Virus record (IMG/VR): IMGVR_UViG_3300009093_000034
Location: 124,001-188,000 of that record
Reading direction: 5' to 3' (one strand)
DNA length: 64,000 nucleotides
A program made the translations under genes and the position numbers. Below, in pieces: positions 31,937 to 54,716 of the stretch (within the stretch, counting starts at the first letter, position 1; every line of letters starts with the position of its first letter). A model generated the notes under the pieces. The model did not search any database. It was not told where the DNA came from and saw only the letters and a list, made by a program, of their open reading frames with translations.

Positions 31937-32881
31937 ATGCGTAAAGACGTCCTCTTGTCTCGCGACGCCTTCCGCAAGGCTGTCTTTGATCGAGACCACA
32001 ACACATGCGTATTCTGTTCTCTTCCTGCAGTAGATGCTCACCACATCATGGAGCGAAAGCTCTGGCCTGATGGTGGCTACTATTTGAACAATGGTGCCTC
32101 CGTCTGCGAACAGCATCACTGGGATTGTGAGAACTCCATCATCTCTGTTGAACAAGTCAGAAAGGCTTGTAACATCATCGACATCATTCTTCCTCCTTAC
32201 TTTTCTGAGAATCAAATCTACGATAAGTGGGGAAATCAGAAGCTCACGACTGAAGAAGCCGGAGCTATCAAGTACCCTAGAACTTATCACTTCCCTTGGT
32301 CCCAAAATCTCATCAACGACGATCGAATGTTGGAGTCTACTTCTCAGTTCGAACTCAACCACGTGATCGCTACGGTCAAGATGGATGGTGAAAACACGAC
32401 CATGACTAGAGATGCTTGTCACGCAAGGTCTCTTGATAGTGGAGCTCATCCTTCTAGAACTTGGGTCAGATCTTTTTGGGGTTCTCTCAAACACAACATT
32501 CCAGAAGGTTGGAGAGTTTGTGGAGAAAATCTTTACGCAAAACACTCAATCCTTTATACTGATCTCACCAGCTATTTCCAAGGCTTATCAATCTGGAATG
32601 ACAAGAACATTTGTCTGTCCTGGAAAGAGACCAAAGAATGGTTTGAACTTCTTGGCATTCAACCTGTCCAAGAGATCTACGATGGCATGTACTACGAAAA
32701 AGGCATCAAGGATCTTTGGGACCCAACAAAAGGTTGGGAAGGCTACGTAGTTCGGTTCGCAGAGGAATTTCCTATGAGAGATTTCAATCTCAAGGTAGGA
32801 AAGTTTGTTAGAAAAGGCCATGTTCAAACTGATGAACATTGGATGCAACAAGCTCTGACACCTAATAAACTCCAGGCCTAA
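31937..32881 (+). CDS. HNH endonuclease-RNA ligase fusion
   Basis: N-term CVFC..DAHHI..LCxxHH; C-term KYPRTYHFPWS, VKMDGENTT, CGENLY, EGYVVR, KFVR. Confidence 0.85.
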   Translation: MRKDVLLSRDAFRKAVFDRDHNTCVFCSLPAVDAHHIMERKLWPDGGYYLNNGASVCEQHHWDCENSIISVEQVRKACNIIDIILPPYFSENQIYDKWGNQKLTTEEAGAIKYPRTYHFPWSQNLINDDRMLESTSQFELNHVIATVKMDGENTTMTRDACHARSLDSGAHPSRTWVRSFWGSLKHNIPEGWRVCGENLYAKHSILYTDLTSYFQGLSIWNDKNICLSWKETKEWFELLGIQPVQEIYDGMYYEKGIKDLWDPTKGWEGYVVRFAEEFPMRDFNLKVGKFVRKGHVQTDEHWMQQALTPNKLQA

Positions 32882-32883
32882 TC

Positions 32884-33321
32884 ATGACTCATCGCATGGA
32901 GCGATGCAAACACTGCAAGATCACCTACGCTTACCAAACATCAGGATGGGGATGTCACGACAAAGAAAACGATGATATCTACTGTCCTGAGTGTATGAGA
33001 AAGATCCTCAAAGCTCTAGAAGAAACTCCTGTTCGTATGGAACCTGTTTGGCTTCCTCTTTCTTATCCGTCTAAGAATCCAATGACGATTGAGAAGTTTG
33101 AAGCTATCAAAGCTGAACAGGAAAAAGATAATCCTTTTTTCTTAAAACTCTATTATCTCACTGGTTATAAAAATATCCGATGGGACTTTCTAAATGATAA
33201 GTCTCCTTTTGGACGACCGTTAAAATACAAACTCTCCACAAACACAGACACCAATGAAAAACTTTTAGAGATAGAAGTTGAACAAGACACAGAGTCTGGT
33301 GAGATTGGAGGGCCTTGGTAA
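32884..33321 (+). CDS. Hypothetical protein (two CxxC)
   Basis: CKHC, CPEC. Confidence 0.6.
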   Translation: MTHRMERCKHCKITYAYQTSGWGCHDKENDDIYCPECMRKILKALEETPVRMEPVWLPLSYPSKNPMTIEKFEAIKAEQEKDNPFFLKLYYLTGYKNIRWDFLNDKSPFGRPLKYKLSTNTDTNEKLLEIEVEQDTESGEIGGPW

Positions 33322-33587
33322 TGTACTTTTCAGAAGAACAAATCAAAAAAGCACAGCAAGATCACAAGGATTTCTTTGATAAAGCAATACGACCTGACAC
33401 GCATCTTAGAGTAAATTGGAGTCTTTACAACGACCTTGTTGAAGAACGGCCTATGGTTAGTGCTGCCGATGAGATCATTCGATATCTTAAACCTGTTTAC
33501 GACTCTAAACCTAAAAATGAAACGGATGAAAAAGTTTCTAGAAAACCAAAAACAAGCACTAAAAAAGGAAAAGGCAAGAGTGAGTAG
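33315..33587 (+). CDS. Hypothetical protein
   Basis: Packed ORF, TAG stop. Confidence 0.55.
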   Translation: MVMYFSEEQIKKAQQDHKDFFDKAIRPDTHLRVNWSLYNDLVEERPMVSAADEIIRYLKPVYDSKPKNETDEKVSRKPKTSTKKGKGKSE

Positions 33588-34533
33588 CGCAGCTAGCATT
33601 CCACGACAGCACATCTTTCATTCCTCTGAACTACAACTCAGAGATGACAAAAAAAATCCAATTCTGCTAGACAGATGGGTAGAGATTGGTCACAACGTTT
33701 ACCAGAAAAGTCCTGAGTCTATCAATAGTCTTCCAGCTGGAATTTATCAACTCAAGGTTGATGATGGACGACTTCTTTTTGAGCGTCAGTTTCCTCAAAC
33801 AGATGAGCTCTTAAGCCTTGAAGGTTCTCAAGAACATCAGGTCTTTGAGGAGATTCAAAAGTTTTGGGAGTCAGGAGATAACTACCATGAGTGGGGTTTT
33901 CTTCACAGACGCGGTATCATCTTGTACGGGCCACAAGGTTGTGGTAAAACAGGGATCGTAACTAGACTTGGTTACCAGCTTGTTGAAGACCATGAAGGCA
34001 TCATCCTGATTGGAAACAATGCTTCTCCAGACTTGATCACCAACGGAATCAAGGCTATCAGAGCTGTAGAAAAAGATCGGCCCATCATCGTTCAGATCGA
34101 AGACATCGATGCTTACATCCAACGTACCGACGAAGCTGACGTTCTTTCTATGTTGGACGGTCAAGATAGCTGCGACAACATCTTGTTCATCGCTACAACA
34201 AACTACATGGGACGCCTTGATCCTCGTATCACTCAAAGGCCCCGGCGCTTCGACGTCCGTGTAGAGATTCTTCCTCCTTCTAAGGAAACTAGAAAGGACT
34301 ACTTCATCAAGAAGTTGAGTGTTCCTCCTGAAGACGCAGAAGCTTTGGCAAAGAAGACTGATCGTTTCACCTTCGCAGGTCTTAGTGATCTTGTTCTTAG
34401 AACTCGAGTTTTGATGCAAGACGAAGACGAGTCTATCTCTAAGGTTCGTGAAGTTATGGAAATGAAGGTTGACAACTCTAAGCCGCTAGGTCCTGAAAGG
34501 GAGATGGGTTTTGGAGCCAGAGCGCTTAGATAA
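33580..34533 (+). CDS. AAA+ ATPase
   Basis: GPQGCGKT, IEDID, RPRRFD. Confidence 0.9.
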   Translation: MSSAASIPRQHIFHSSELQLRDDKKNPILLDRWVEIGHNVYQKSPESINSLPAGIYQLKVDDGRLLFERQFPQTDELLSLEGSQEHQVFEEIQKFWESGDNYHEWGFLHRRGIILYGPQGCGKTGIVTRLGYQLVEDHEGIILIGNNASPDLITNGIKAIRAVEKDRPIIVQIEDIDAYIQRTDEADVLSMLDGQDSCDNILFIATTNYMGRLDPRITQRPRRFDVRVEILPPSKETRKDYFIKKLSVPPEDAEALAKKTDRFTFAGLSDLVLRTRVLMQDEDESISKVREVMEMKVDNSKPLGPEREMGFGARALR

Positions 34534-34537
34534 ATTT

Positions 34538-34708
34538 ATGTTTCCTTCTGCTACATGGATGGCTACTATTGGTCTTGATAGGTTAGAGGAAATGAAGGAA
34601 GAAATCTTTGAACAGTATGACCTTCTCTATTTTGAACCAGGCTTTGATGAATTCAAAGAAAATTTAAGAAAAGAACTTCAATACAGAAAGTCCACTGAGA
34701 TATTGTAA
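34538..34708 (+). CDS. Small hypothetical protein
   Basis: Packed ORF. Confidence 0.4.
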   Translation: MFPSATWMATIGLDRLEEMKEEIFEQYDLLYFEPGFDEFKENLRKELQYRKSTEIL

Positions 34709-34861
34709 GACGTATTGCATTCACTAATTTTCTAGGTTCTAAACTTTTCAATAAGGAGATGCCACGATGAAGAAGTAGACTCGCGCCACTCAGCCGCCCT
34801 AATTGCCTGTTGTGCCTTTGTAGACCAAAATCTATCAAATCCATAACAAGGAGAAACAATT

Positions 34862-44655: not shown

Positions 44656-45381
44656 ATGTCCATTGTCATCTCAGGGGATCTTCACGGAACCCACGACTAT
44701 CATACCATCACTAACAAGAATGTGAAGAAACAGCTCAGCCAACAAAACAAGGACTATCCTCCTAACTACCACATCGTAGCAGGAGACTGGGGTGCCATCT
44801 GGAACGACTCTCATGAATCTCTGAAAAGAGAGAACCATCTCATCAGATGGTACAATGAGAAACCTTGGGAGACCTTGGTTGTTCTTGGTAACCATGAAGG
44901 CTACTCTAGAATCTATCGTCTTCCGATCATAGAAAAGTTTGGAGGACCTATTTGGAAAGTTTCTGACAGGATTCACATCCTCCAAAATGGGCATGTTTAT
45001 GAGATTGAAGGGAAGAAGTTCTTAGTTTATGGTGGAGGCGACTCCATTGATAAAGCTAGCAGACAACCTTTTGTCTCTTGGTGGCCTGAAGAGATTCCTA
45101 CCTATCGTCATTTCATGCAAGCCATGGAGTCCATCGATCAAGTCTCTGGAAAGGTTGACTATGTCATCACCCACACGTGTCCTAACAACGTTCTTGATCA
45201 TATGGTAGAGAACAAACTTCTCTACTCAGGTCAAAAGTTATCAGACCCTACGGTTCCTCAGTTAGATGGAGTTCAAGCTGCTTTGGTTGACTACAAGAAG
45301 TGGTTCTTCGGACACTTCCATGTTGATTTTGAGTTTGAAAAATATCAGTGCCTTTACAAAAAGTTGGTTGTGATAAACTAA
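44656..45381 (+). CDS. Calcineurin-like metallophosphoesterase
   Basis: GDLHG, GDWG, GNHE, THTCP, FGHFH. Confidence 0.92.
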   Translation: MSIVISGDLHGTHDYHTITNKNVKKQLSQQNKDYPPNYHIVAGDWGAIWNDSHESLKRENHLIRWYNEKPWETLVVLGNHEGYSRIYRLPIIEKFGGPIWKVSDRIHILQNGHVYEIEGKKFLVYGGGDSIDKASRQPFVSWWPEEIPTYRHFMQAMESIDQVSGKVDYVITHTCPNNVLDHMVENKLLYSGQKLSDPTVPQLDGVQAALVDYKKWFFGHFHVDFEFEKYQCLYKKLVVIN

Positions 45382-45393
45382 CTCAGTAACAGC

Positions 45394-46257
45394 ATGTCTA
45401 TCTTCAAATTTTTCACCGTAGCTGACAACAATCTTTTTCTAGAGCTTGCAGTTTCATGCGCTGAGACCTTTTTGTCTGGAACCTCGTTACCTTTTTCTAT
45501 CTACTTCTATGGTCAAGTACCACAGAGTGATCGATTGAACTCTCTTCAGAAAGCCTATCCTGATAGATTCAACTTGATCACAAGGAAGCTTGAAAAGCCT
45601 CTAGACCAGAAGATAAGTTACAAGTGGAGTCCGGTGATCCTAGAAAGGTACTCAATCCTGGACGAGTTAGGTGTAGGATCAATTTACGTTGACTGCGATG
45701 TGTTTCTTTTAAGAAAGATCTCACAAGAGGTATTGGACAAACTTGAGAAAAGAGTTTTGTCTAGTACCTCTTCTTTTTTTGCCTTCTTAGACAATCCAAT
45801 CCACGTAGAAAAGTTCATGCCAGGTTATATTGGGATGATCAAGAACTACGTTTGTTCTGGGTTCTTGATCAAAGGCAATGGATCAATTGACAATAGAATG
45901 ATTCGTCAAATCTTGATCAACCACTACAACTTCCACAAAATACCTATGGTGAATGGCGATCAAGATGCTTTGAATGCCTACAACTCAAGAACCAATTTCA
46001 TCTCTGTTTTAACTGACGATGACTTAGTGTATTGGTCCCCTGACCGATATTTCCATGAAAAAAGTCCAGATTGGGCCACAAAAACAGGAAAGTACTGGGC
46101 AGATCCTTTGAGACGAATGTTTTTAGAGCCATCTTTTTTGGAGAGTGATCAAAATAAAGAGTTCATCTTTCACTTCTTTGGAAAGAAAGATCCTGACTAC
46201 ATCTCATACATCTTGAGAGAAGTGGGAAGATTTAAAGCAACTCAATCTTCTTCTTGA
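45394..46257 (+). CDS. GT8-like glycosyltransferase
   Basis: YVDCDVF, CSGF, NGDQDALN, IFHFFG. Confidence 0.65.
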   Translation: MSIFKFFTVADNNLFLELAVSCAETFLSGTSLPFSIYFYGQVPQSDRLNSLQKAYPDRFNLITRKLEKPLDQKISYKWSPVILERYSILDELGVGSIYVDCDVFLLRKISQEVLDKLEKRVLSSTSSFFAFLDNPIHVEKFMPGYIGMIKNYVCSGFLIKGNGSIDNRMIRQILINHYNFHKIPMVNGDQDALNAYNSRTNFISVLTDDDLVYWSPDRYFHEKSPDWATKTGKYWADPLRRMFLEPSFLESDQNKEFIFHFFGKKDPDYISYILREVGRFKATQSSS

Positions 46258-46984
46258 TGTCTTTCCAATCTGGCTTAGACCCTTCTCTGAAATGAAGTAA
46301 GCCACCATCTTTGACGGTGTTCTTAGTCAGATAAGTGTTCTTCAAAAAGGTGATGTTGTACTTTCTATCTAGCTCTGTCACAAGGTCATCTCCATATCTC
46401 TCTTTGAAAGAAATGAAGAAGTAGTTCAAGAGACCTTGATCATTGTTGAAGTTCTTAAAGAAGCTCTCGTAGTAATTCTTGGTCAAGACCTTAACAAGAA
46501 ATTTCTTGTAGTAAGTGATCTCACTCTCTGACCACTTTGACAAGTCCCAATAAATCACACCACTATTGAATCTCTCAACTCCAGAGAACTCCTCACTCAC
46601 CATAGCCAGCTTTTCATTTACATTGAAAAAGCTAGAGTTTGTGTTGGGGAGAACATATAGATCTGAGTCTAGGTACCAAAATGGTACTTTATTGAAGAAT
46701 AGAGGAAAAAAGATCTTCACAAAAGGAAGACCTGTAAAATGATAGTTATGGAACTGAGTCTTAGCAAGTTCTAGGCCATCTAGAACAGAGATGTCAAGTT
46801 GATCTTGAACCGATAGCTCAAGATCAGTCAAGGTAAAGACTTTGAATTTAGAAAGTTCTTTTGGTGGCTTAGTTCTTTCGGCCCAGAAGACTGCTATCTC
46901 TTGACTAAGAGATTTTACTTGTCCTATGAGATGGTAAAGATTTTTCAGATACCATTTGTTGTTATCAACTAAGAAAACAATCAT
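46232..46984 (-). CDS. GT8 glycosyltransferase
   Basis: WYLDSDL, FNSGV, NDQGLLN, KYN, LLHF..KP. Confidence 0.8.
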   Translation of the reverse strand: MIVFLVDNNKWYLKNLYHLIGQVKSLSQEIAVFWAERTKPPKELSKFKVFTLTDLELSVQDQLDISVLDGLELAKTQFHNYHFTGLPFVKIFFPLFFNKVPFWYLDSDLYVLPNTNSSFFNVNEKLAMVSEEFSGVERFNSGVIYWDLSKWSESEITYYKKFLVKVLTKNYYESFFKNFNNDQGLLNYFFISFKERYGDDLVTELDRKYNITFLKNTYLTKNTVKDGGLLHFREGSKPDWKDIKKKIELL

Positions 46985-46987
46985 TCT

Positions 46988-47773
46988 TTAGTTCAGAAGG
47001 CACTTCTCATAAGGAAGATAGGCAAACCATAGACCGTTGTAACTTTTAACTGGAAGTCCAAACAACGGAGCTATCTTATCTAATGATGCCTCTGGTCCTC
47101 CTAGTAAAACTTTCTTAGCAACATAATGAGCTGCTAGTGAGATGTAGTATATAGCGCGAATCTTAGGATCAGGCTCTGGAACGTAATCTGTGTTGTTTCT
47201 AGTAAAGAACTCTTCTAGAAGAAAGTCGAACAAGATCTGTTTTGAAGAACACACAAAGGAGTTTGCTCTATTGTTAGGATCGAACATCTTTGCAGTGTAA
47301 ACGTTTTGAAGACCATTCAAAACAAAGAACCCAATCTTACTCATAGCGGTTTCAGAGTAATCTCTTTTGACATCAAGAAGAATAGATAAAAGTTGATTTT
47401 TATCGATCTTAACCACAATCAAGTTGTTAACGTCTTCAGGCTTTGGCTCTGTTCCAAAAAATCCTTTAACAAAGAAACTCGAGTCAATGGCGATGTAGTT
47501 AAACTCCACGTTCTCAACTGGAAGATCATCAAAGTTACTCTCCATATACAAGAAGTCTTTAAGATCTTGATCTGTTGAATTGATGTCTAGTAATCTCCAA
47601 GACTGAAGAACAAGGTTTCCTAAGTGTTCGTGAGGAGCTGTTGAAGGAATAGAATCTGGAACATCTTCATAGATAAACTCAGAGACTTGAGGTTTTAAGG
47701 TGTGTCTTGGATTTGGAAACGTAATTCTTCTCATGTTAGAAAATACCACCGTATGAAACAGAAAGATCTGCAT
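46988..47773 (-). CDS. Hypothetical protein between fibre and GT8 genes
   Basis: Coupled on the minus strand. Confidence 0.6.
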   Translation of the reverse strand: MQIFLFHTVVFSNMRRITFPNPRHTLKPQVSEFIYEDVPDSIPSTAPHEHLGNLVLQSWRLLDINSTDQDLKDFLYMESNFDDLPVENVEFNYIAIDSSFFVKGFFGTEPKPEDVNNLIVVKIDKNQLLSILLDVKRDYSETAMSKIGFFVLNGLQNVYTAKMFDPNNRANSFVCSSKQILFDFLLEEFFTRNNTDYVPEPDPKIRAIYYISLAAHYVAKKVLLGGPEASLDKIAPLFGLPVKSYNGLWFAYLPYEKCLLN

Positions 47774-50700
47774 AACTTAGGCTGAGGAACACAATGTTGT
47801 TAATAGTTTGGTTAGCAGCCAAAGACATTCCAGCTGGACCACCATAGTTAACCCATGTTTGATTGGACGTGGTTAAAACAATAGAAGAGGTATTTTGGTT
47901 GAACGGCGATGCAGTTAGGTTTGTTGTACCTCCAGCGTTGTACTGAACTTGAATACCGCCGCCGCTGCTTATTGATGGAATGGTAGGAGAGAATGGAGGT
48001 GCTGACGTTGCTCTAACTTGAGCCGTGAACAATCCAGCGTCTGTTCCATAAATTCCTGTTCCTCCCGTGTTAACGTCCCAAGTAACTAGAACACCAAGAG
48101 CAGAAGGACTTACTGTTCCAGCAAAAGTTGGAGGAGTGAAGGCTAGGAAGTCTGTGTTTCCAGCCGTTGCAGCCCAAGTCCAAGTGGTTCTGTTTCCTGC
48201 GTTGTACTCAGTGACCAAGATGTTAGCAGTGTTTCCAGATCCAGTTCTTCCTGAACCAGAGTTGGCCCACGTTGGAGTTCCTGGGCTGATACCAGAGTTA
48301 AGAGTTGCATTGTTGACAGAGACTGTCCAAGCTCCTGCACCACCGTTAGAAGCTGCAGCTGTGACTGTATCATTCAACTTGTTTGGAGCAACTAGAGCCG
48401 TGTTAGCAGTGTAGGACAACAGAGGGTTCATGGCTGTGTAGTCTGTGTTTCCTGCTGTGGTGAACACAAACACAAGAGGGAAGTTTGCAGCATACTCAGA
48501 AGGTTTGATGGTTCCTGTTAGTCCAGATCCTGAGTGAACTGTGACTGCACTCAAGTTCTTGGTGGTCCATGTCACACTAGGTGTGAGACCAGATGCTAGA
48601 ACGATGCTAGAGATGTTGTTAGAGTTGATGATCAACGTCCAACCAGTTGCTCCTGCTGCACCAGCAGAAACAGAAAATGGGAAACCAGAAACTATGGAAT
48701 CAGCTTTAGTTCCAGGAGCTTGTGAAGCTGTAAAGGTGTAAGCTGGGTTGGTGTCAGAGTAAGCACCATTGGTATAGGTCTGTCCAAAACCAATGTAGTC
48801 AGTTGATGTAGCAGTTGTCCAAGTCCATCTCAATCTATAACCAGTAGCGTACACACTAGGAGGTAAGGTGTTGGTGACTGTTAGTCCTGTACCATGACCA
48901 GAAGCTCCACTGGTTGGAACCGTGGCAACTGGAGTAGACGTGTTGTCCAACACATCCCATGAAGGGGTTCCTGGAGAGGTAAGGGAAGTAAAGGTAGGCT
49001 GTACAGCTGTGTTTCCCCATTGTCCAGCTGAGGATGTAGCCGGAGATGAGACTGTGTCATGCTTAGGATAAGGCGTGGCAGACACCGTGACAGTATAGCT
49101 AGGGAAGTAAGAAGATCCTCCCGTGAATGGAGTTACAGCAGCACTGTTAGAAATCGATCCTGAAGATGGAGCGTTGTTGTTATGAGTATGGTCTGAGAGA
49201 GTTCCAACCAAACCATACACAGGAGTTGTGATAGAACCATCAAAAAAGACTCCCCAAGGTTGAGGCGTGGCTGTTTTGGTTCCAGTTACTCCTGGAACTG
49301 CTAATGTTAGGGGTAGAGGTACGTAACTAGACCAAGCTCCTGCTGTGGTGTAAGGTGTAGCTCGGTAACGTACAGCGATCTGATAGACAAATTGTCCAGA
49401 GTATCCACCATGAGTGGCTACTTGTGGAACAGAGAGTCCAGTTGTTCCTGCACTAAAGAAGTTTGAAGGTAGGTCTCCAACCAAGGAAACCCAAGTAATT
49501 CCACCGGTGGTATCGAAGATTTGGATTCCGCTTAGAGATCCCAGGTAAAGTTTAGTTCCTGATAAGAACGGCGCAACCATTAATATAGTTCCTACTTGAC
49601 TCCAAGTAGTTCCTCCGTCCGAGGAAGCAAAGGTCTTAGCATTTACCGTATTAATGTAAACCGTGTTAGATCCAGTTGCTACTACTATCTGAATTTGATT
49701 GGCATCAAATCCACTAGAAGATGTTATGGTGGTAAAGGATCCACTTCCGTCCATGGTGGTGGACTTCATCAATCCTACGTTGGCACCAATGTAGATTGCA
49801 CCACTTGTAGCAGAGACTGATCTCATTACGTTGGTAGAACCAACCTGATATGAGTTCCATGTTGTTCCACCGTTTGTAGAAACTAGAAGTCCCGTGGTGG
49901 TGCTATCAATACCAATGGTGTAAATGGTTGAGCCATTTACAAATAGGTCTCTAGCTCCAAAGAAAGTTCCCCAACCTGAAGTTCCTGTTCCATAGTTTGT
50001 CCAAGAAGTTCCGCCGTTAGACGATACAGAGATTCCCGCTGATGCCATAGCAACATAGATCTTTCCTCCTGATACAACCGTCTTTTGAACAGATGCGTTG
50101 GGAATTCCGCTGTTTCCGTTGTTGAAAACGGACCAGCTAACACCATTGGTGGTTGAAACTGCAAGTCCTCCCGTGTTTGTACCAACGTAGATGGTCGTAC
50201 CAAAGATAGCCACAGATACGATGGTGTTGCTTGGGAGTCCGTTCGCTGTGGTGTAGGTGTTCCAAGTAACTCCTCCGTCTGTGGAGACGAAGAGTCCTGC
50301 AGAGCCAGTAGCGTCGAAACATGCCATCAACAATCCGTTGACTGCTACTGTTGAGATGATCGTGTTAGAAGGTAAACCGTTGGACGTAGTGATACTAGAG
50401 TTGTAGTTAGGTCCACCAACAGACCATGCATTGTTAGGACCATACCCTAACATGTATTGAATGTCAAACTCAACGAGACCAGTGTAACCAGCAGCATCTG
50501 TGTAAGGGTAAGTAAGAAAGCCTCCACCGTTAACACCAAGAGTTCCTAGAATAGGGACTCGGGTCTGAGAGGCTTGTGTTCCGTTAACTCCTGTTTGAAA
50601 CAGAGTTCCTAGGTCGACACCATTGATCTTAAAACCTGTGGTTATGGGTGAGTTGGCTCCAGGAGTTTGTAGGTTAGCTGCTAGAAACTCAGTCTCGGCA

Positions 50701-50843
50701 TCTTTAGGAGTTCCAGGGAAGGCTGTGTCAAAAAAATAGCCTGGAACGTCGGTTCTCTTGTATGAGACACCTGCTAAAACGTTGTCAGTTCTGAGTAGAT
50801 TATTATCTAGTGAAACGCCACCTGATTTGAGATTAGACGCCAT
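47736..50843 (-). CDS. Long tail fibre / receptor-binding protein with Asp-box beta-propeller
   Basis: Repeated SxDGGxTW/STNGGTTW boxes; T/S/G-rich C-terminal repeats. Confidence 0.8.
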   Translation of the reverse strand: MASNLKSGGVSLDNNLLRTDNVLAGVSYKRTDVPGYFFDTAFPGTPKDAETEFLAANLQTPGANSPITTGFKINGVDLGTLFQTGVNGTQASQTRVPILGTLGVNGGGFLTYPYTDAAGYTGLVEFDIQYMLGYGPNNAWSVGGPNYNSSITTSNGLPSNTIISTVAVNGLLMACFDATGSAGLFVSTDGGVTWNTYTTANGLPSNTIVSVAIFGTTIYVGTNTGGLAVSTTNGVSWSVFNNGNSGIPNASVQKTVVSGGKIYVAMASAGISVSSNGGTSWTNYGTGTSGWGTFFGARDLFVNGSTIYTIGIDSTTTGLLVSTNGGTTWNSYQVGSTNVMRSVSATSGAIYIGANVGLMKSTTMDGSGSFTTITSSSGFDANQIQIVVATGSNTVYINTVNAKTFASSDGGTTWSQVGTILMVAPFLSGTKLYLGSLSGIQIFDTTGGITWVSLVGDLPSNFFSAGTTGLSVPQVATHGGYSGQFVYQIAVRYRATPYTTAGAWSSYVPLPLTLAVPGVTGTKTATPQPWGVFFDGSITTPVYGLVGTLSDHTHNNNAPSSGSISNSAAVTPFTGGSSYFPSYTVTVSATPYPKHDTVSSPATSSAGQWGNTAVQPTFTSLTSPGTPSWDVLDNTSTPVATVPTSGASGHGTGLTVTNTLPPSVYATGYRLRWTWTTATSTDYIGFGQTYTNGAYSDTNPAYTFTASQAPGTKADSIVSGFPFSVSAGAAGATGWTLIINSNNISSIVLASGLTPSVTWTTKNLSAVTVHSGSGLTGTIKPSEYAANFPLVFVFTTAGNTDYTAMNPLLSYTANTALVAPNKLNDTVTAAASNGGAGAWTVSVNNATLNSGISPGTPTWANSGSGRTGSGNTANILVTEYNAGNRTTWTWAATAGNTDFLAFTPPTFAGTVSPSALGVLVTWDVNTGGTGIYGTDAGLFTAQVRATSAPPFSPTIPSISSGGGIQVQYNAGGTTNLTASPFNQNTSSIVLTTSNQTWVNYGGPAGMSLAANQTINNIVFLSLSYADLSVSYGGIF

Positions 50844-51753
50844 GAGCCGATCTTACCTCTCCTGCAAGCTCTTGAACGGCCTTTAAGAGAAGACCGATGG
50901 TAGTGTTGATGTCAAAGTGCTTTTGATCTGGTCCTGAGATAAGAGGATCGGTGTCCTCAGCGATGAAACCAACCATCTCCTTGGCATCAGCACCTTGGTT
51001 CTTGTACTTGTAGGATACAATGTCGATGCCATTGATGATATCAATGGCGGATTGCTTGAACTTCTTAATAGCTCTCTTTGCAGTTCTTGATGATGTTGCG
51101 TTGAAAGAAGGAGCATTGATCTGAGCGTTGGCTGTGATCTGTCCTGTTCCTTTGGAGTTCAAGAGAAGAGCTGCATTGGAAACAGTACTTACCACACTGA
51201 CACTTGCTTGAGCAACATCACGAGAGAACTGAAGCCAACTGTTAGAGCTGGCAACTGCGATCAAGTCAATGATGGGGTTTCCAGATGCATCGTTGACAAA
51301 GGTTGCTGTGGTGTTGTTCTCTGCTACGTTAGAGAACTTGATGTTGTTTCCTGCGGCTGCATCAAAGGTGAGACCAGTTGCAACGATCTCAATACCATTG
51401 TTGAACTTAACGGAACCAGAGACAGCTTGGAATGGGTCGTTAACTAGAATGTAAGCAGCAGTGTTTTTCTTTAAGGTATCAACTTGAATGTTGGTGGCGA
51501 TGAGAGTAGGAACAGTAAGACTATTTCCTCCACCAGAGAAGGAAACGTTTCCACTAACACTGATTGAAGTTGCTTGAAGAACTAGGTTGGCAGTGTTTCC
51601 TGCACCAATTTGGATCGTGTCTGTTCTAGGAGTGACTGCATCAATGATGAGTTTGCTAGTTGAACTATCATAGTTGATAGCGATGGTTCCGTTAACTGGA
51701 ACGATATCGGTACCAAAAAGAATTTTACTTGTAGTAAATGCAGATGAACCCAT
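50833..51753 (-). CDS. Tail fibre protein with C-terminal intramolecular chaperone (peptidase S74)
   Basis: TSSRTAKRAI..IVSYKYK..VGFIAED..LLKAVQEL. Confidence 0.88.
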   Translation of the reverse strand: MGSSAFTTSKILFGTDIVPVNGTIAINYDSSTSKLIIDAVTPRTDTIQIGAGNTANLVLQATSISVSGNVSFSGGGNSLTVPTLIATNIQVDTLKKNTAAYILVNDPFQAVSGSVKFNNGIEIVATGLTFDAAAGNNIKFSNVAENNTTATFVNDASGNPIIDLIAVASSNSWLQFSRDVAQASVSVVSTVSNAALLLNSKGTGQITANAQINAPSFNATSSRTAKRAIKKFKQSAIDIINGIDIVSYKYKNQGADAKEMVGFIAEDTDPLISGPDQKHFDINTTIGLLLKAVQELAGEVRSAHGV

Positions 51754-51785
51754 TTAACACCACTCCTATTTTCTAATTAGTGGTG

Positions 51786-54071
51786 TTACTCTTCCTCGAA
51801 AAGCTCTCCAAAGTAATCTGGGCTATCAAGATGCTCTCTAAGCTTTGAGAAGTTCAACTCTCCCTGAGGAATTCTGTCTTCCTTAGCCATCTTCTCGAGC
51901 TCTTCACGAAGAGTGAGTCTCTTCTCAAATGGGTTATGACCAGACTTGTCAGCTTCTCTCCACTTGATCATGGTGTCAAAGTAAGTCTCGTCTTCCACTC
52001 GTGGCTTATCGGAGATCAACTTTCTGTAGTATCCACCACCAGTAGACTCTGTGATCCTGTTCTTGGTAAGAAGTTCAAAGTAGGTCTCGTAGAACTTTTG
52101 CTTGTTCTTGTTATATCTCTCTGTGAGCTCTTGTTCTCTCATTCTAGCAAGATACTGCTTTCGTTGTTCAGCAAGTCTCTTGATGGTTCCTTGAGAGATA
52201 GCAGATTCTTCAGTTGGAGCAGCCGTTTCAGCGCCGCCCTCTTCTGGAGTAGGAGCTTCTCCACCTTCAGATCCTTCTTCTTCAGGTGCTGCTTCTCCAC
52301 CGCCACCTTCTCCAAATCCACCAAAGTCAAGGTCAAGAGTTTCTCCACCCTTAGCAGCTGCTGAACCCTGTTCAGCAGAGCCTTCATCCGAGGTGGCCTT
52401 TGCCTTTTGTGCCAGGACGCTCATGGAGACCTTTTGGGTCCACTTGAGAACGTCAGTAGGGTTCAAGAAGGTGTATTTAGCGAGAATGTCCTTAACAACG
52501 TCAGGAGGTAGAGGTTCTCCCTCTTCAACTCCCATGGAAGTTCCGATGACGTCGATGATCTTTTGAGCCATGTCCAAGGTAGCAGATCTAGCTTGTTGTT
52601 TTTCATCAGAAGCTTCTTCTGCTGGGAACCTCATGGCCAAGGAGAATGGAGTGGTGAAGTCAAACTCACCGGTGATGGCCATGTGAAGACGAATCAAGCT
52701 TCCAAGACCGTCAAGGAAGTTGGATTGCAATGTGTGAACGTGAGTAGCAAAAGGCTTCCATTGTTCAACAAGAGAAACGGCTGAGTTACCAAAACCACCC
52801 CACTCTTGAACTAGGTAACCTTTAGGGATACCAGAAGCGATAGCGATTCTGTCGATGTACATCTCAAGGTCTGCCACGAAGTCAATGTCTGCTTCTGACT
52901 TTGCGATCTCCACCTCAAGAAGACCATCTGGCAACCACATTTTAGTGTTGACAGAGAAGGCTTCACCTGAACCTGCTGTAGGTGAGACGCCGATGTTGTC
53001 ATACTGTTCACGAGTCTTGTTAACGTGAGACCAAACCTCAGCCTCAGATTGACCAGGAGCTGTTTTGACCTTATACAAGGTGACAGGGAAGCTCAAGATA
53101 CGAGCAATGGACTGAAGAGTCATAGTAGAAGCAGCTTGCTTGAACGGAGCCAAACAAGCTAGAAGGTGAGGTCTTCCGTATGGATAAAATTCTGAGTGGT
53201 CAGCATCATTTCTGAAGTGAGTAACGGCCCAAGGAGGAATGACCGTATCGTTATCAACAACAAAACCAAAGAGCTTAGTCTCAAACATCTCAGCGAAGTC
53301 TTCTGCATTGTTGATGGCCTCGAATTGGTCAAGTAGAAGAGCCATCTTCTGGTCTCTGTTGATGGCGTTCATCACAGAACCTTGTCTAAGTCTGATGATC
53401 TCTGCGACCTTGGTCGGGTTGAACTCAAGTCTTTCTAAGATCTGGTTGACTTGAAGAGGGATGATCTTCTCAACACCTCTAGAAGTAACTTTCTGAGCCC
53501 AGAAGGCTTCACCGAATAGTTCTAGATCAAAGAAGGCTCCGTGAACTCTAGATTGAGTGATTCCCCAAAGATCAAAGAGCTCGTAGATCCTATCAACAAA
53601 AACAGGGTTTGGAGACTCAACAGAGATGAGTCTGTCTTGAATAGTAAGTTGAGTAGCTTCGTCTGGAGCTAATTGTGTGACTCTAGAGATGAATGGATCG
53701 TTGTAGTACATGAACTTGAGTTCATTGATTCTCTTTTGTCGATCGCGTAGGTCATCGTAACCATTTGTGCTGTCTCGAAGCCAAGCGTCAAAGAGTTTTC
53801 CTAACTTATCACTGAATGGACTCTTACTGAAGAGCTCGCCTAATCTGGCGTCAGATCCACGTTGAGACATGTTATCGAGGTCAACTCGAACCATGTCAAT
53901 ACCATACTTTCCAGCGATGCTGTTGCTAGACTTTCCCTTTTCAGAGTTTGGTCTCCAACCCCACCATGACGTGAGACGTGAAAGGAACCCAGTTCTAGCT
54001 ATGGAAGACTGGTTTCCCTTTCCTGTGATGTAGGTTGTAAAGTTATTCTCTCTGAGTCTTTCTTTTGCCAA
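51786..54071 (-). CDS. Portal protein, T4 gp20-like
   Basis: LFGEAFW, PPWAVTHFR, YGRPHL, RILSFPVTLYKV, IAIASGIPKGYL. Confidence 0.8.
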   Translation of the reverse strand: MAKERLRENNFTTYITGKGNQSSIARTGFLSRLTSWWGWRPNSEKGKSSNSIAGKYGIDMVRVDLDNMSQRGSDARLGELFSKSPFSDKLGKLFDAWLRDSTNGYDDLRDRQKRINELKFMYYNDPFISRVTQLAPDEATQLTIQDRLISVESPNPVFVDRIYELFDLWGITQSRVHGAFFDLELFGEAFWAQKVTSRGVEKIIPLQVNQILERLEFNPTKVAEIIRLRQGSVMNAINRDQKMALLLDQFEAINNAEDFAEMFETKLFGFVVDNDTVIPPWAVTHFRNDADHSEFYPYGRPHLLACLAPFKQAASTMTLQSIARILSFPVTLYKVKTAPGQSEAEVWSHVNKTREQYDNIGVSPTAGSGEAFSVNTKMWLPDGLLEVEIAKSEADIDFVADLEMYIDRIAIASGIPKGYLVQEWGGFGNSAVSLVEQWKPFATHVHTLQSNFLDGLGSLIRLHMAITGEFDFTTPFSLAMRFPAEEASDEKQQARSATLDMAQKIIDVIGTSMGVEEGEPLPPDVVKDILAKYTFLNPTDVLKWTQKVSMSVLAQKAKATSDEGSAEQGSAAAKGGETLDLDFGGFGEGGGGEAAPEEEGSEGGEAPTPEEGGAETAAPTEESAISQGTIKRLAEQRKQYLARMREQELTERYNKNKQKFYETYFELLTKNRITESTGGGYYRKLISDKPRVEDETYFDTMIKWREADKSGHNPFEKRLTLREELEKMAKEDRIPQGELNFSKLREHLDSPDYFGELFEEE

Positions 54072-54305
54072 TTAGAACACCAACTTTTGTCGACCAGAAG
54101 GTCTAGGTGCATTCTTCATGTGAGTTACCATTGCTGTAAAATCATTGTCGGCAAAGTAGTCAGGAACGTGGACAGATGGTTTCTTCATCACCCTTTTCAT
54201 CTTGTGATCGTGATCACAAAGGACTTCCTTTGGAGGTCCATCTTGGATGGCGTAGGAAACTGTCTTAGTCTGATTGCACTCTTCGCATGTAAAATCTACT
54301 CGCAT
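54072..54305 (-). CDS. FmdB-like Zn ribbon
   Basis: DFTCEEC..VLCDHDHKMKRV. Confidence 0.75.
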   Translation of the reverse strand: MRVDFTCEECNQTKTVSYAIQDGPPKEVLCDHDHKMKRVMKKPSVHVPDYFADNDFTAMVTHMKNAPRPSGRQKLVF

Positions 54306-54338
54306 AAAACGCCTTTATCAATTAGTTACTTATTGTCT

Positions 54339-54716
54339 ATGGATGCACTAATCGCTGAACAGAAAACCAGATTTAGAACTCTAAAGATCTGGAAAGAATT
54401 TAGACAACATCTGATTGAGGTCAGAGGTCCTAGTTGTGAGTGTTGTGGAACAACCTACTCAGGTAAAAGAAAAAAGCAACTCCAGATCCACCATTTGTAC
54501 CCATCTCAGTACGAACTTCTTGAGGAGTTCAGATTCAAGATTCTTTGTAGCAGATGTCACGACGCTGTTGAAACAATTAACATAAAACTCAAATCTAAGA
54601 ACCAAACGTTGATCAGAAGAGATTTATTTCTTGCTCTATATGGTGAATTTCTTCCACGCGAAGAGCCCTTAAGATCTAAGTATAACCTTGAACAGTTCGA
54701 AAAGGATCAAAATTAA
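54339..54716 (+). CDS. HNH endonuclease
   Basis: CECCG..QIHHL..LCSRCH. Confidence 0.8.
   Translation: MDALIAEQKTRFRTLKIWKEFRQHLIEVRGPSCECCGTTYSGKRKKQLQIHHLYPSQYELLEEFRFKILCSRCHDAVETINIKLKSKNQTLIRRDLFLALYGEFLPREEPLRSKYNLEQFEKDQN

What the first reader, a model, noticed from the sequence alone, without database searches (positions are those of the whole stretch)
45394..51753. GT8 genes coupled to tail-fibre genes, with phage UDP-xylose synthase: possible virion xylosylation
The minus-strand run S74 fibre, Ser/Thr-rich fibre, hypothetical, GT8 is overlap-coupled, and a second GT8-like gene converges on it. UXS (35863) makes UDP-xylose, and GT8 includes xylosyltransferases (established). Inference: fibre or capsid glycosylation, or host-surface remodelling.
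Basis: partly seen in the sequence, partly recalled or inferred. Interest (0 to 1): 0.62.

Follow-up and report, generated by a model that had tools for sequence, protein, structure and literature searches.

The report
Phage fibre operon with GT8 glycosyltransferases
A 306-kb soil phage keeps two divergent family-8 glycosyltransferase genes next to a serine/threonine-rich fibre-like protein, as do its few known relatives, so it probably sugar-coats that fibre, but nothing ties the sugar to the phage's UDP-xylose synthase.

Summary
On the minus strand, an S74-chaperone fibre gene (306 aa), a 1035-aa protein, a conserved unknown gene and a GT8 gene (GT8a) are packed head to tail. A second GT8-like gene (GT8b) converges on them. 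The 1035-aa protein is the most Ser/Thr-rich in the proteome and carries an Asp-box propeller. The gene at 35863 is a UDP-xylose synthase (E 1e-124 to human UXS1).

Support for fibre glycosylation:
- GT8a has only four relatives among 1.84 billion representative proteins. Each full-length one sits behind a large, variable Ser/Thr-rich protein.
- A short motif, ACTAAYT, precedes virion genes throughout the genome. It also precedes this operon, GT8b and a third GT8 operon, and it recurs at the same places in relatives.

The xylose link is not supported:
- UXS lies 9.5 kb away behind a tRNA.
- 0 of 20 other UXS-bearing viral contigs have a Pfam GT8.
- One related lineage carries a tyvelose-epimerase-like enzyme in the cluster instead.

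One rival is real. The genome encodes a T4-type dCMP hydroxymethylase, so 5-hmC DNA is likely, and GT8-like phage enzymes are known to extend DNA glycans. That gene sits 59 kb away behind a different motif.

Verdict: a new variant of virion glycosylation, predicted but not shown. The donor sugar is unknown.

The parts
51786..54071 (-). 761-aa portal-like protein, the gene just upstream of the module
   Evidence: No family hit. Relatives exist at 37-74% identity. In five relatives it is followed by homologues of a scaffold-like 663-aa protein and a 614-aa protein that hits PHROG 'major head protein' at E 5e-7. That is portal-scaffold-capsid order, so the portal assignment rests on synteny.
51774..51781 (-). 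Motif A (ACTAATTA), 28 nt before the S74 start; a likely late-type promoter or leader element
   Evidence: ACTAAYTA occurs 36 times in the genome, and 22 of these lie within 45 nt upstream of a same-strand start (1.2 expected, P 1e-23). It precedes the S74 fibres, the scaffold-like gene and nearly every gene of the tail block. It sits at the same place in L021.
50833..51753 (-). 306-aa fibre protein with a C-terminal S74 intramolecular-chaperone domain
   Evidence: Pfam PF13884, 35.1 bits, residues 221-268. PHROG tail proteins. Two paralogous S74 proteins lie elsewhere in the genome. Homologue in L021 at E 3e-51.
47736..50843 (-). 1035-aa modular fibre-like protein and the proposed glycan acceptor. 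It has a conserved N-terminal part of about 130 aa, an Asp-box (BNR) propeller at about 170-460, and a Ser/Thr-rich repeated C-terminal half.
   Evidence: Highest Ser+Thr content in the proteome and only 3-7% charged residues. Four S-x-D/N-G-G-x-T/S-W motifs. Sub-threshold matches to PSII_BNR, Sortilin and F510_1955, and to Ycf48 at E 4e-5. The N-terminus is shared with the L021 560-aa protein while the rest is variable.
46988..47734 (-). Conserved unknown protein (248 aa from the revised start), always placed between the large protein and GT8a
   Evidence: Homologues in L019 (E 6e-35) and L021 (E 6e-14) at the same position. The alignment supports the second ATG as the start. No family or fold was found.
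46232..46984 (-). GT8a, a 250-aa divergent family-8 glycosyltransferase and the last gene of the operon
   Evidence: Pfam GT8, 30.4 bits. D106-x-D108 and the N-x-G-V motif are invariant across the family alignment. The Q-G-x-L-N and H-F-x-G-x-x-K-P motifs are visible in every full-length row. Best PDB matches are GlyE (5gvv) for the single sequence and glycogenin for the family profile.
45394..46257 (+). GT8b, a 287-aa GT8-like glycosyltransferase convergent on GT8a
   Evidence: Atlas features 0.97 and structure TM 0.64-0.70 to GT8 models. GT8 profile E 5e-6. Homologues converge on the module in L019, L020 and L021, in tandem pairs in L019 and L020.
45377..45384 (+). Motif A variant (ACTAACTC), 17 nt before the GT8b start
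   Evidence: The variant class is itself enriched before starts (7 of 13, P 8e-8). ACTAACT lies just upstream of the GT8b homologue's start in L021.
44656..45381 (+). Metallophosphatase, the conserved neighbour upstream of GT8b
   Evidence: Pfam Metallophos. The same neighbour is present in L019 and L020 at E 4e-137.
35863..36807 (+). UDP-xylose synthase (UDP-glucuronate decarboxylase); its link to the module is unproven
   Evidence: E 1.4e-124 to human UXS1. No UDP-glucose dehydrogenase in the genome.

Best explanation
This is a late-expressed fibre cassette of a 306-kb rhizosphere jumbo phage.

The proposed order of events:
1. One transcription unit starts at an ACTAATTA motif just after the portal-like gene.
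2. It encodes a short S74 fibre, a 1035-aa modular fibre-like protein, a conserved 248-aa partner of unknown fold, and a divergent family-8 (retaining, Mn-dependent GT-A) glycosyltransferase, GT8a.
3. A second GT8-like enzyme, GT8b, is expressed from its own copy of the motif on the opposite strand.
4. In the infected cell's cytoplasm these enzymes most likely transfer sugars from UDP-sugars onto Ser/Thr hydroxyls of the large protein's distal, Ser/Thr-rich domains, or extend such glycans, before the fibre is built into the virion. The result would be a mucin-like glycosylated fibre.

Shown here: the gene content, the catalytic motifs, the conserved gene order and the shared upstream motif.

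Inferred: that the motif marks late transcription, that the acceptor is the large protein, and that the enzymes are active.

The donor is unknown. UDP-xylose from the phage UXS is one candidate among several.
For: 1. GT8a has only four relatives in 1.84 billion representatives. Their contigs fall into three diverged lineages. In each, the gene follows a large Ser/Thr-rich protein (the C-terminal fragment in L019, 560, 1486 or 2115 aa; Ser+Thr 0.23-0.28) and a protein of about 233-267 aa. An S74 fibre lies upstream wherever the contig reaches that far.
2. The large proteins share an N-terminal part of about 120-130 aa and differ in the rest, the usual build of host-recognition fibres. The number of GT8 genes varies from 2 to 4.
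3. The 1035-aa protein is the most Ser/Thr-rich in the proteome, about 4 sd above the mean.
4. Motif A is strongly enriched before start codons (P 1e-23). It precedes the S74 fibres, the scaffold-like gene and the tail block, and also this operon, GT8b and the third GT8 operon. It is conserved at the same places in L021 and L022.
5. The nucleotide-metabolism unit that holds the dCMP hydroxymethylase sits behind a different motif, TGAGATATT.
6. The catalytic motifs are intact in GT8a and GT8b.
7. The nearest solved relatives are protein-glycosylating GT8s: GlyE of the pneumococcal serine-rich-repeat adhesin pathway (my identification of entry 5gvv) and glycogenin.
8. No GT2, GT1 (PF00534) or T4 alpha-GT family gene was found, so the three GT8-like genes are the only glycosyltransferases seen.
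9. Precedent: phage-encoded glycosyltransferases glycosylate mycobacteriophage capsid and tail-tube proteins (Freeman et al. 2023, as cited in PMC12619734).
Against: - There is no direct evidence of any glycan. The phage is known only from metagenomes.
- That motif A marks late transcription is an inference. The motif also precedes some non-structural genes, such as a lipase.
- Gene order could reflect a shared variable island rather than shared function. In the two closest portal relatives (L003, L004) the position after the small fibre holds other cargo, a TnpB-like gene or radical-SAM genes.
- The conserved 248-aa partner has no assignable fold.
- The genome probably makes 5-hmC DNA, which offers another acceptor.
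- GT8a scores only just above the Pfam cut-off, and GT8b is below it.
Confidence: 0.45

Rival explanations
1. DNA hypermodification. The phage replaces cytosine with 5-hydroxymethylcytosine, and one or more of the three GT8-like enzymes add or extend sugars on hmC in its DNA, possibly a pentose derived from UDP-xylose. This would protect the DNA from restriction and CRISPR nucleases.
For: - Genome 229415-230713 encodes a T4 gp42-type dCMP hydroxymethylase. It scores E 1.4e-50 to PDB 1b49, against about 4e-11 to thymidylate synthases, and the catalytic Cys and the Asp that sets dCMP specificity are aligned and conserved. It is fused to a dUTPase/dCTPase-like domain and follows a P-loop nucleotide-kinase-like gene.
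- Two GT8-like phage GT-A enzymes add secondary sugars to glycans on 5-hmC (bioRxiv 10.1101/2023.12.21.572611).
- Pentose-modified cytosines are known in phages: ara-hmC in RB69 and a deoxypentose in Thanatos (PMC6024577, PMC12838424).
- No clear T4-type DNA glucosyltransferase was found. The only hit is 13.7 bits to the beta-GT model in a 347-aa gene 3 kb from the hydroxymethylase.
Against: - GT8a and GT8b lie 59 kb from the hydroxymethylase and GT8c 25 kb from it, whereas DNA-modification genes usually cluster.
- All three GT8 units sit behind the virion-gene motif, and the hydroxymethylase unit sits behind the other motif.
- GT8a relatives are tied to a fibre gene in every contig.
- Only 1 of 20 UXS-bearing viral contigs has a hydroxymethylase homologue.
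- The three proteins are neutral to acidic, which is only weak evidence.
Confidence: 0.15
2. Host-envelope remodelling. The GT8s act as their bacterial relatives do, as LPS-core or other cell-surface glycosyltransferases. They alter the infected cell's surface glycans, for example to block superinfection or to prevent progeny from re-adsorbing to debris.
For: - Most bacterial GT8 are LPS glucosyl- or galactosyltransferases. GT8c's relatives are named 'lipopolysaccharide biosynthesis glycosyltransferase' by their sources, and the Atlas neighbours of GT8b include LPS 1,2-glucosyltransferases.
- UXS occurs in many viral contigs without any GT8, which fits auxiliary metabolism feeding host pathways.
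Against: - GT8a and GT8b have almost no relatives outside this phage lineage, and their link to the fibre gene is conserved.
- Late co-expression with virion genes in a large, apparently lytic phage leaves little time for surface remodelling to matter.
- None of the three has a membrane segment, although LPS-core GT8 enzymes also lack them.
Confidence: 0.12
3. Adjacency without a shared function. The region behind the portal-adjacent fibre is a hypervariable cargo island, and the GT8 genes are passengers whose acceptor is unrelated to the fibre, or whose activity has been lost.
For: - In L003 and L004 the same position holds a TnpB-like gene or radical-SAM genes.
- L022-L025 hold a long, mixed cluster there.
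- An HNH endonuclease sits next to the portal-like gene.
Against: - The order large protein, 248-aa protein, GT8a is kept at 30-40% protein identity, while the large protein itself is exchanged.
- The catalytic motifs are invariant or kept in every full-length row.
- There is no internal promoter motif between the S74 start and the end of GT8a, in this genome or in L021.
Confidence: 0.1

Closest known systems
Mycobacteriophage virion glycosylation (Freeman et al. 2023, Cell Host Microbe; read here only through its citation in PMC12619734)
   Same: Phage-encoded glycosyltransferase genes sit beside structural genes, and virion proteins are O-glycosylated before assembly.
   Different: There the acceptors are C-termini of capsid and tail-tube subunits in small siphophages, and from my own knowledge the enzymes are not GT8. 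Here the presumed acceptor is a 1035-aa fibre-like protein of a jumbo phage, the enzymes are divergent GT8s, and nothing has been shown experimentally.
GT8 enzymes that glycosylate proteins: GlyE of the pneumococcal serine-rich-repeat adhesin pathway (PDB 5gvv) and glycogenin
   Same: These are the best solved-structure matches of GT8a, with shared DxD, Q-G-L-L-N and H-x-x-G-x-x-K-P-W motifs. In the GlyE pathway the acceptor is also a very Ser-rich protein (own knowledge).
   Different: Similarity is remote (E 5e-4 and 2e-3, partial). GlyE extends a GlcNAc primer laid down by a GT-B enzyme (own knowledge), and no such enzyme was found here.
Giant-virus glycosylation: Mimivirus fibrils (GT8 R707) and chlorovirus PBCV-1 capsid glycans, which contain xylose (own knowledge, not checked here)
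   Same: Virus-encoded sugar-nucleotide enzymes and glycosyltransferases decorate virion surface fibres or capsids independently of host machinery. The Atlas neighbours of GT8b include Nucleocytoviricota GT8 clusters.
   Different: Those are eukaryotic viruses with unrelated virion architecture. This is a tailed phage with a portal-like gene, S74 fibres and an HK97-type head-protein hit.
Phage DNA glycan-extending GT8-like enzymes GT14I and GT43I (bioRxiv 10.1101/2023.12.21.572611)
   Same: They are GT8-like GT-A phage enzymes. This genome also has the means to make 5-hmC.
   Different: Those genes lie inside methyltransferase/TET-type DNA-modification clusters. Here the GT8 genes are 25-59 kb from the hydroxymethylase and tied to fibre genes.
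Notch xylosyltransferases GXYLT1/2 and XXYLT1 (GT8 enzymes that use UDP-xylose; own knowledge)
   Same: They show that the GT8 fold can use UDP-xylose on a protein-linked glycan.
   Different: No specific similarity to them was found; they were not among the PDB matches. Donor-pocket residues could not be compared.

Membership tests
Glycosyltransferase family 8 (Pfam PF01501) - GT8a | Profile score above the curated cut-off | tested here: met
   30.4 bits against a cut-off of 24.3, covering positions 8-252 of 253.
Glycosyltransferase family 8 - GT8a | DxD metal/nucleotide motif, N-x-G-V, Q-G-x-L-N and C-terminal H-x-x-G-x-x-K-P-W | tested here: met
   D106, D108, N140, G142 and V143 are invariant in six sequences. 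The other motifs are present in every full-length row and align to glycogenin.
Glycosyltransferase family 8 - GT8b | Profile score above the curated cut-off | tested here: not met
   No Pfam, PHROG or NCBIfam hit. It matches only a profile built here, at E 5e-6.
Glycosyltransferase family 8 - GT8b | GT-A fold like GT8, and the catalytic motifs | tested here: met
   The Atlas model (pTM 0.82) aligns to GT8 models at TM 0.64-0.70, and all ten best family-bearing feature hits share the GT8 family or clan. V-D-C-D-V, G-D-Q-D-A-L-N and F-H-F-F-G-K-K-D-P are present.
Glycosyltransferase family 8 - both | Retaining transfer from a UDP-sugar; identity of donor and acceptor | not testable with these tools
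   Needs enzyme assays. Family membership does not fix the donor.
UDP-xylose synthase (UXS, UDP-glucuronate decarboxylase) | Full-length similarity to characterised UXS well above other SDR sugar enzymes | tested here: met
   419 bits (E 1.4e-124) to human UXS1. The next family scores 131 bits and ArnA-type enzymes 82 bits.
UDP-xylose synthase | A supply of UDP-glucuronate from within the same system | tested here: not met
   No UDP-glucose dehydrogenase family match in the 306-kb genome, so the substrate must come from the host.
Peptidase_S74 intramolecular-chaperone fibres | C-terminal S74 domain above the cut-off | tested here: met
   35.1 bits against 22, residues 221-268 of 306. Autocleavage is not testable here.
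BNR/Asp-box beta-propeller | Repeated S-x-D-x-G-x-T-W motifs and a family profile match | tested here: inconclusive
   Four motifs at residues 187, 274, 322 and 407. All profile hits are below their cut-offs. Ycf48 scores E 4e-5. No fold was predicted.
Phage virion glycosylation system | Glycosyltransferase genes co-located and co-regulated with structural genes | tested here: met
   Packed operon, conserved synteny and the shared upstream motif.
Phage virion glycosylation system | Glycans present on virion proteins | not testable with these tools
   Metagenomic phage with no particles or proteomics. No RNA run is on record among the listed holders of this stretch.
T4-type hmC DNA glycosylation | dCMP hydroxymethylase with catalytic Cys and specificity Asp | tested here: met
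   E 1.4e-50 to PDB 1b49, with Cys148 and Asp179 aligned and conserved.
T4-type hmC DNA glycosylation | Glycosyltransferase clustered with the base-modification genes | tested here: not met
   The GT8 genes are 25-59 kb away. The alpha-GT family is absent, and the beta-GT model hits at only 13.7 bits in a 347-aa gene. That gene's fold prediction failed.

The most novel reading that the evidence does not exclude
A lineage of environmental jumbo phages carries an exchangeable 'glyco-fibre' cassette. It consists of a hypervariable, mucin-like Ser/Thr-rich fibre, its own divergent GT8 enzymes, an unknown conserved partner, and lineage-specific sugar-nucleotide enzymes (UXS here, a tyvelose-epimerase-like enzyme with radical-SAM enzymes elsewhere). 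The phages would then display different self-made glycans on a virion fibre. In this phage the glycan would contain xylose, making it the first xylosylated bacteriophage particle.
Probability: 0.12. Interest if true: 0.75.

Novelty: new variant of a known kind. Interest (0 to 1): 0.5.

Why it matters
Glycosylation of bacteriophage particles has been demonstrated only in mycobacteriophages, on capsid and tail-tube proteins. A conserved cassette that pairs a host-recognition-type fibre with its own glycosyltransferases would extend the phenomenon to jumbo phages and to fibres. There, glycans could shield the fibre from proteases or host defences, or could take part in adsorption.

The cassette also gives a clean test system: four small genes and one acceptor protein that can be co-expressed.

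The same genome probably makes 5-hmC DNA. It is therefore a case in which protein and DNA glycosylation compete as explanations for phage glycosyltransferases, and it cautions against assigning either from family names alone.

Tried and rejected
Searches for close relatives
- DNA and protein searches of GenBank phages found nothing for the region or for the 761-aa protein.
- IMG/VR scans with GT8a, GT8b, the 1035-aa protein and the GT8a family alignment found no relatives.
- A metagenome scan with the GT8a alignment also found none.
- Word searches returned only the proteins themselves for GT8a and GT8b. I therefore spent the one exhaustive search on GT8a.

Structure prediction
- The 347-aa gene near the hydroxymethylase, tested as a candidate beta-glucosyltransferase, gave pLDDT 31 and is unusable.
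- The 248-aa partner, folded with a 3-sequence alignment, gave pLDDT 50. Foldseek against the PDB found nothing below E 1.6, and the Atlas model was also poor.
- A profile of the portal-like family against the PDB gave only noise.

Regulatory scans
- The sigma-70 promoter and terminator scan showed no excess over shuffled sequence. I replaced it with a search for the genome's own upstream motifs.

UXS co-occurrence tests
- Other UXS-bearing phages carry no Pfam GT8 (0 of 20 IMG/VR contigs, 0 of 3 GenBank records) and rarely a hydroxymethylase.
- Their UXS neighbours (PTPS, ClpP, UvdE, cytidylyltransferase, formyltransferase) give no lead to an acceptor.

Steps that could not be run or were not used
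- Whole-record searches of the metagenomic relatives were not possible.
- Read laying was not used. The only holders are DNA contigs, which cannot show expression or base modification.
- No alternative genetic code was used. The suppressor-type tRNA prompted a check, which found no sign of recoding.

Full report
**Setting**

The window is bases 124001-188000 of a 305,833-bp viral record with direct terminal repeats, rated complete. The same sequence is held by rhizosphere metagenome runs. It is a tailed jumbo phage:
- it has three S74-domain fibre proteins;
- a 614-aa protein hits a PHROG major head protein;
- it has a ClpP-type prohead protease and many tRNAs.

It has no close relative among GenBank phages.

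**The observation**

Reading the minus strand:

| Window coordinates | Product | Evidence |
|---|---|---|
| 51786-54071 | 761-aa protein | Best read as the portal. In five relatives its homologue is followed by a scaffold-like gene and a head-protein-like gene. |
| 50833-51753 | 306-aa fibre | S74 intramolecular-chaperone domain, 35.1 bits. |
| 47736-50843 | 1035-aa protein | Fibre-like, Ser/Thr-rich, with Asp-box motifs (below). |
| 46988-47773 | Unknown protein | No family or fold found. |
| 46232-46984 | GT8a, 250 aa | Pfam GT8, 30.4 bits against a cut-off of 24.3. |

GT8b (45394-46257, plus strand) converges on GT8a, and the two overlap by 26 nt at their 3' ends.

The junctions are tight. 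S74 and the 1035-aa gene overlap by 11 nt. The unknown gene and GT8a are 3 nt apart. The apparent 38-nt overlap at the start of the unknown gene is probably an artefact of taking the longest ORF. Both homologues align from the second ATG, 1 nt after the preceding stop.

GT8b has no Pfam hit, but three independent lines make it GT8-like:
- ESM Atlas features and structure;
- a GT8 profile built from relatives of the third GT8, which finds GT8b at E 5e-6 and GT8a at E 9e-5 and nothing else among 455 ORFs;
- the motifs V-D-C-D-V, G-D-Q-D-A-L-N and H-F-F-G-K-K-D-P.

The gene at 35863 is a UDP-xylose synthase beyond reasonable doubt, at E 1.4e-124 to human UXS1.

**The large protein**

It is more than a Ser/Thr-rich fibre.
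- It has the highest Ser+Thr content of the proteome (26.8% against a mean of 13.2%, sd 3.4) and very few charged residues.
- Residues about 170-460 carry four Asp-box motifs. They match BNR-type propellers weakly: PSII_BNR, Sortilin, an F510_1955 'glycosylhydrolase' model, and Ycf48 at E 4e-5.
- The first 130 residues or so are shared with the 560-aa counterpart in relative L021, and the 2115-aa protein of L022 opens with a visibly similar N-terminus. The remainder is not conserved.

A conserved proximal part with an exchangeable distal part is the usual build of phage host-recognition fibres.

**Relatives**

GT8a and GT8b are nearly orphans. Word searches found only the proteins themselves. 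I therefore used the exhaustive search for GT8a. It found four relatives among 1.84 billion representatives, at 32-41% identity. Their contigs fall into three lineages:

| Lineage | Gene order |
|---|---|
| L021 | Portal-like 761 aa; S74 291 aa; Ser/Thr-rich 560 aa; homologue of the unknown protein; GT8a type. A GT8b type converges. |
| L019/L020 | C-terminus of a homologue of the 1035-aa protein; homologue of the unknown protein; two GT8a types. Two GT8b types and the same metallophosphatase converge. |
| L022-L025 | S74 425 aa; 224 aa; Ser/Thr-rich 2115 aa (split into 438 aa + 1486 aa in L024); 267 aa; GT8a type; four unknown genes; an SDR enzyme closest to CDP-tyvelose 2-epimerase; a GT8b-like gene; three radical-SAM genes. 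A GT8b-like gene converges. |

The 267-aa protein of the L022 lineage shares only a short L-F-D-x-x-x-E-E-F motif with the unknown protein, which is a hint and no more.

Across lineages, the pairing of a large Ser/Thr-rich protein with a GT8a-type enzyme is kept. The large protein, the number of GT8 genes and the accessory sugar enzymes all change. By contrast, the two closest portal relatives (L003, L004) carry other cargo behind the small fibre, so the position is also a variable island.

**Regulatory motifs**

The sigma-70 scan was uninformative, so I looked for the genome's own upstream words.

Motif A:
- ACTAAYTA occurs 36 times on both strands, and 22 of these lie within 45 nt upstream of a same-strand start codon. 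The expected number is 1.2 (P 1e-23).
- With the last base free, it precedes 53 genes. These include all three S74 fibres, the scaffold-like gene, a 1472-aa tail-collar-type fibre and nearly every gene of the tail block at 268-298 kb.

Motif B:
- TGAGATATT(GTA) precedes small genes and RNA- and nucleotide-metabolism genes. Among them is the unit that holds the nucleotide kinase and the dCMP hydroxymethylase.

Placement relative to the GT8 genes:
- Motif A lies 28 nt before the S74 gene of this module, and no further motif occurs before the end of GT8a.
- A variant lies 17 nt before GT8b.
- Another copy lies directly before the operon that contains the third GT8.
- In L021 the motif is again before S74 and before the GT8b homologue. 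In L022 it is before the 2115-aa gene and before the convergent GT8b-like gene.

I read motif A as a late-type promoter or leader element. That is an inference from the genes it precedes. It also precedes a few non-structural genes.

**The xylose link**

UXS lies 9.5 kb upstream on the plus strand. It sits directly behind a terminator-like hairpin and a tRNA, with neither motif in the 140 nt before it. The evidence on a link to the GT8 genes points both ways.

For a link:
- No GT2, GT1 (PF00534) or T4 alpha-GT family gene was found, so the three GT8-like genes are the only visible consumers of a phage-made UDP-sugar. That is the one argument for a link.

Against a link:
- The genome has no UDP-glucose dehydrogenase.
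- UXS is frequent in viral contigs: 55 or more IMG/VR loci at 49% identity or above, several on contigs over 200 kb.
- 0 of 20 such contigs has a Pfam GT8, and no GT8-profile hit lies within 10 kb of UXS in 56 loci.
- GenBank phages with UXS also lack GT8.
- These contigs are unrelated to this phage.
- The relatives that carry a sugar-nucleotide enzyme inside the cassette have a different one.

The donor remains open.

**The DNA rival**

At genome 229415-230713 lies a T4 gp42-type dCMP hydroxymethylase.
- It scores E 1.4e-50 to PDB 1b49, against about 4e-11 to thymidylate synthases.
- The catalytic Cys and the Asp that sets dCMP specificity are conserved.
- It is fused to a dUTPase/dCTPase-like domain and follows a nucleotide-kinase-like gene.

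The phage therefore probably makes 5-hmC DNA. GT8-like phage enzymes that add secondary sugars to hmC-linked glycans have been described, and pentose-bearing cytosines are known in phages.

Against this reading for GT8a and GT8b:
- the distance to the hydroxymethylase (59 kb), when such pathways normally cluster;
- the different upstream motif;
- the fibre linkage in every relative.

A 347-aa gene 3 kb from the hydroxymethylase gives a 13.7-bit hit to the T4 beta-glucosyltransferase model. It could not be confirmed. It belongs to a PHROG family of unknown function.

**Conclusion**

The most likely reading (about 0.45) is a late fibre cassette whose GT8 enzymes O-glycosylate the Ser/Thr-rich fibre-like protein. 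The conserved 248-aa protein would be an unknown helper.

| Reading | Confidence |
|---|---|
| Fibre glycosylation | about 0.45 |
| DNA glycan synthesis | 0.15 |
| Host-surface remodelling | 0.12 |
| Mere adjacency | 0.10 |

'Virion xylosylation' is possible but has no specific support. Compared with what is known, this is a new variant of phage virion glycosylation: a different enzyme family, a different kind of acceptor and a jumbo-phage lineage. It is predicted from sequence only.

Noticed in passing
window 35775-35849 (+): A tRNA with anticodon CTA, which would read the TAG stop codon (ARAGORN labels it tRNA-Pyl). It lies 13 nt before the UXS start and just after a terminator-like hairpin. 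The window holds 20 tRNA genes. TAG is the rarest stop (44 of 455 ORFs) but is still used, and coding density is 93% under the standard code, so the genome shows no recoding.
   Followed up: partly
genome 228432-230713 (outside the window; L015:5432-7713): A T4 gp42-type dCMP hydroxymethylase fused to a dUTPase/dCTPase-like domain, preceded by a P-loop nucleotide-kinase-like gene. The phage DNA probably contains 5-hydroxymethylcytosine.
   Followed up: yes
genome 231569-234687 (L015:8569-11687): Three genes downstream of the hydroxymethylase: an unknown 389-aa protein, a weak PLP-enzyme-like 295-aa protein, and a 347-aa protein of PHROG 13881 with a 13.7-bit hit to T4 beta-glucosyltransferase. 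They are candidates for further DNA hypermodification steps.
   Followed up: partly
whole genome; for example window 51774-51781 (-) and 45377-45384 (+): Two classes of upstream motif. ACTAAYT lies 5-38 nt before 53 genes, including most virion genes. TGAGATATT(GTA) lies before small, RNA- and nucleotide-metabolism genes. They look like late and early/middle promoter elements, and the first is conserved in relatives.
   Followed up: yes
genome 200390-205114 (-) (L014:5390-10114): A third and clearest GT8 (296 aa, 90.5 bits) lies in a five-gene minus-strand operon with four unknown proteins (178, 165, 449 and 492 aa), behind motif A.
   Followed up: partly
window 54087-54716 (+): An HNH homing-endonuclease-like gene sits between the portal-like gene and an SNF2-type helicase, 15 nt from the portal-like start. 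The same arrangement is found in L003, L004 and L021.
   Followed up: no
L022:10822-20306 (also L023-L025): In a related jumbo-phage lineage the cassette continues with four unknown genes, a CDP-tyvelose-2-epimerase-like SDR, two GT8b-like genes and three radical-SAM genes. This looks like a larger glycan-tailoring cluster behind a 2115-aa Ser/Thr-rich protein.
   Followed up: partly
L026-L081 (IMG/VR loci): UXS is common in viral contigs, including several of 200-430 kb. Its recurrent neighbours are PTPS/QueD-like, ClpP, UvdE, cytidylyltransferase-like and formyltransferase genes, not glycosyltransferases.
   Followed up: partly
L011 (Pseudomonas phage QdP_Psa3, PV055685.1:1-14764): A UXS-like gene (44% identity) lies with a thymidylate-synthase-family gene, a UDP-glucose dehydrogenase, a nucleotidyltransferase and a helicase. 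The group looks like a candidate sugar-based DNA modification cluster.
   Followed up: no
L010 (ON073792.1, 'Aphanizomenon phage Yong-DA'): The UXS region of this 42.6-kb 'phage' record is annotated with Wzy, Wzc, a polysaccharide export protein and several sugar enzymes. It resembles a bacterial exopolysaccharide locus more than a phage genome.
   Followed up: no
window 31937-40742 (+): A run of RNA-repair and translation-related genes surrounds UXS: RNA ligase, an AAA ATPase, PTH2-type peptidyl-tRNA hydrolase, an Rv2179c-like 3'-5' exoribonuclease, a class-3 lipase and a CCA-adding enzyme.
   Followed up: no
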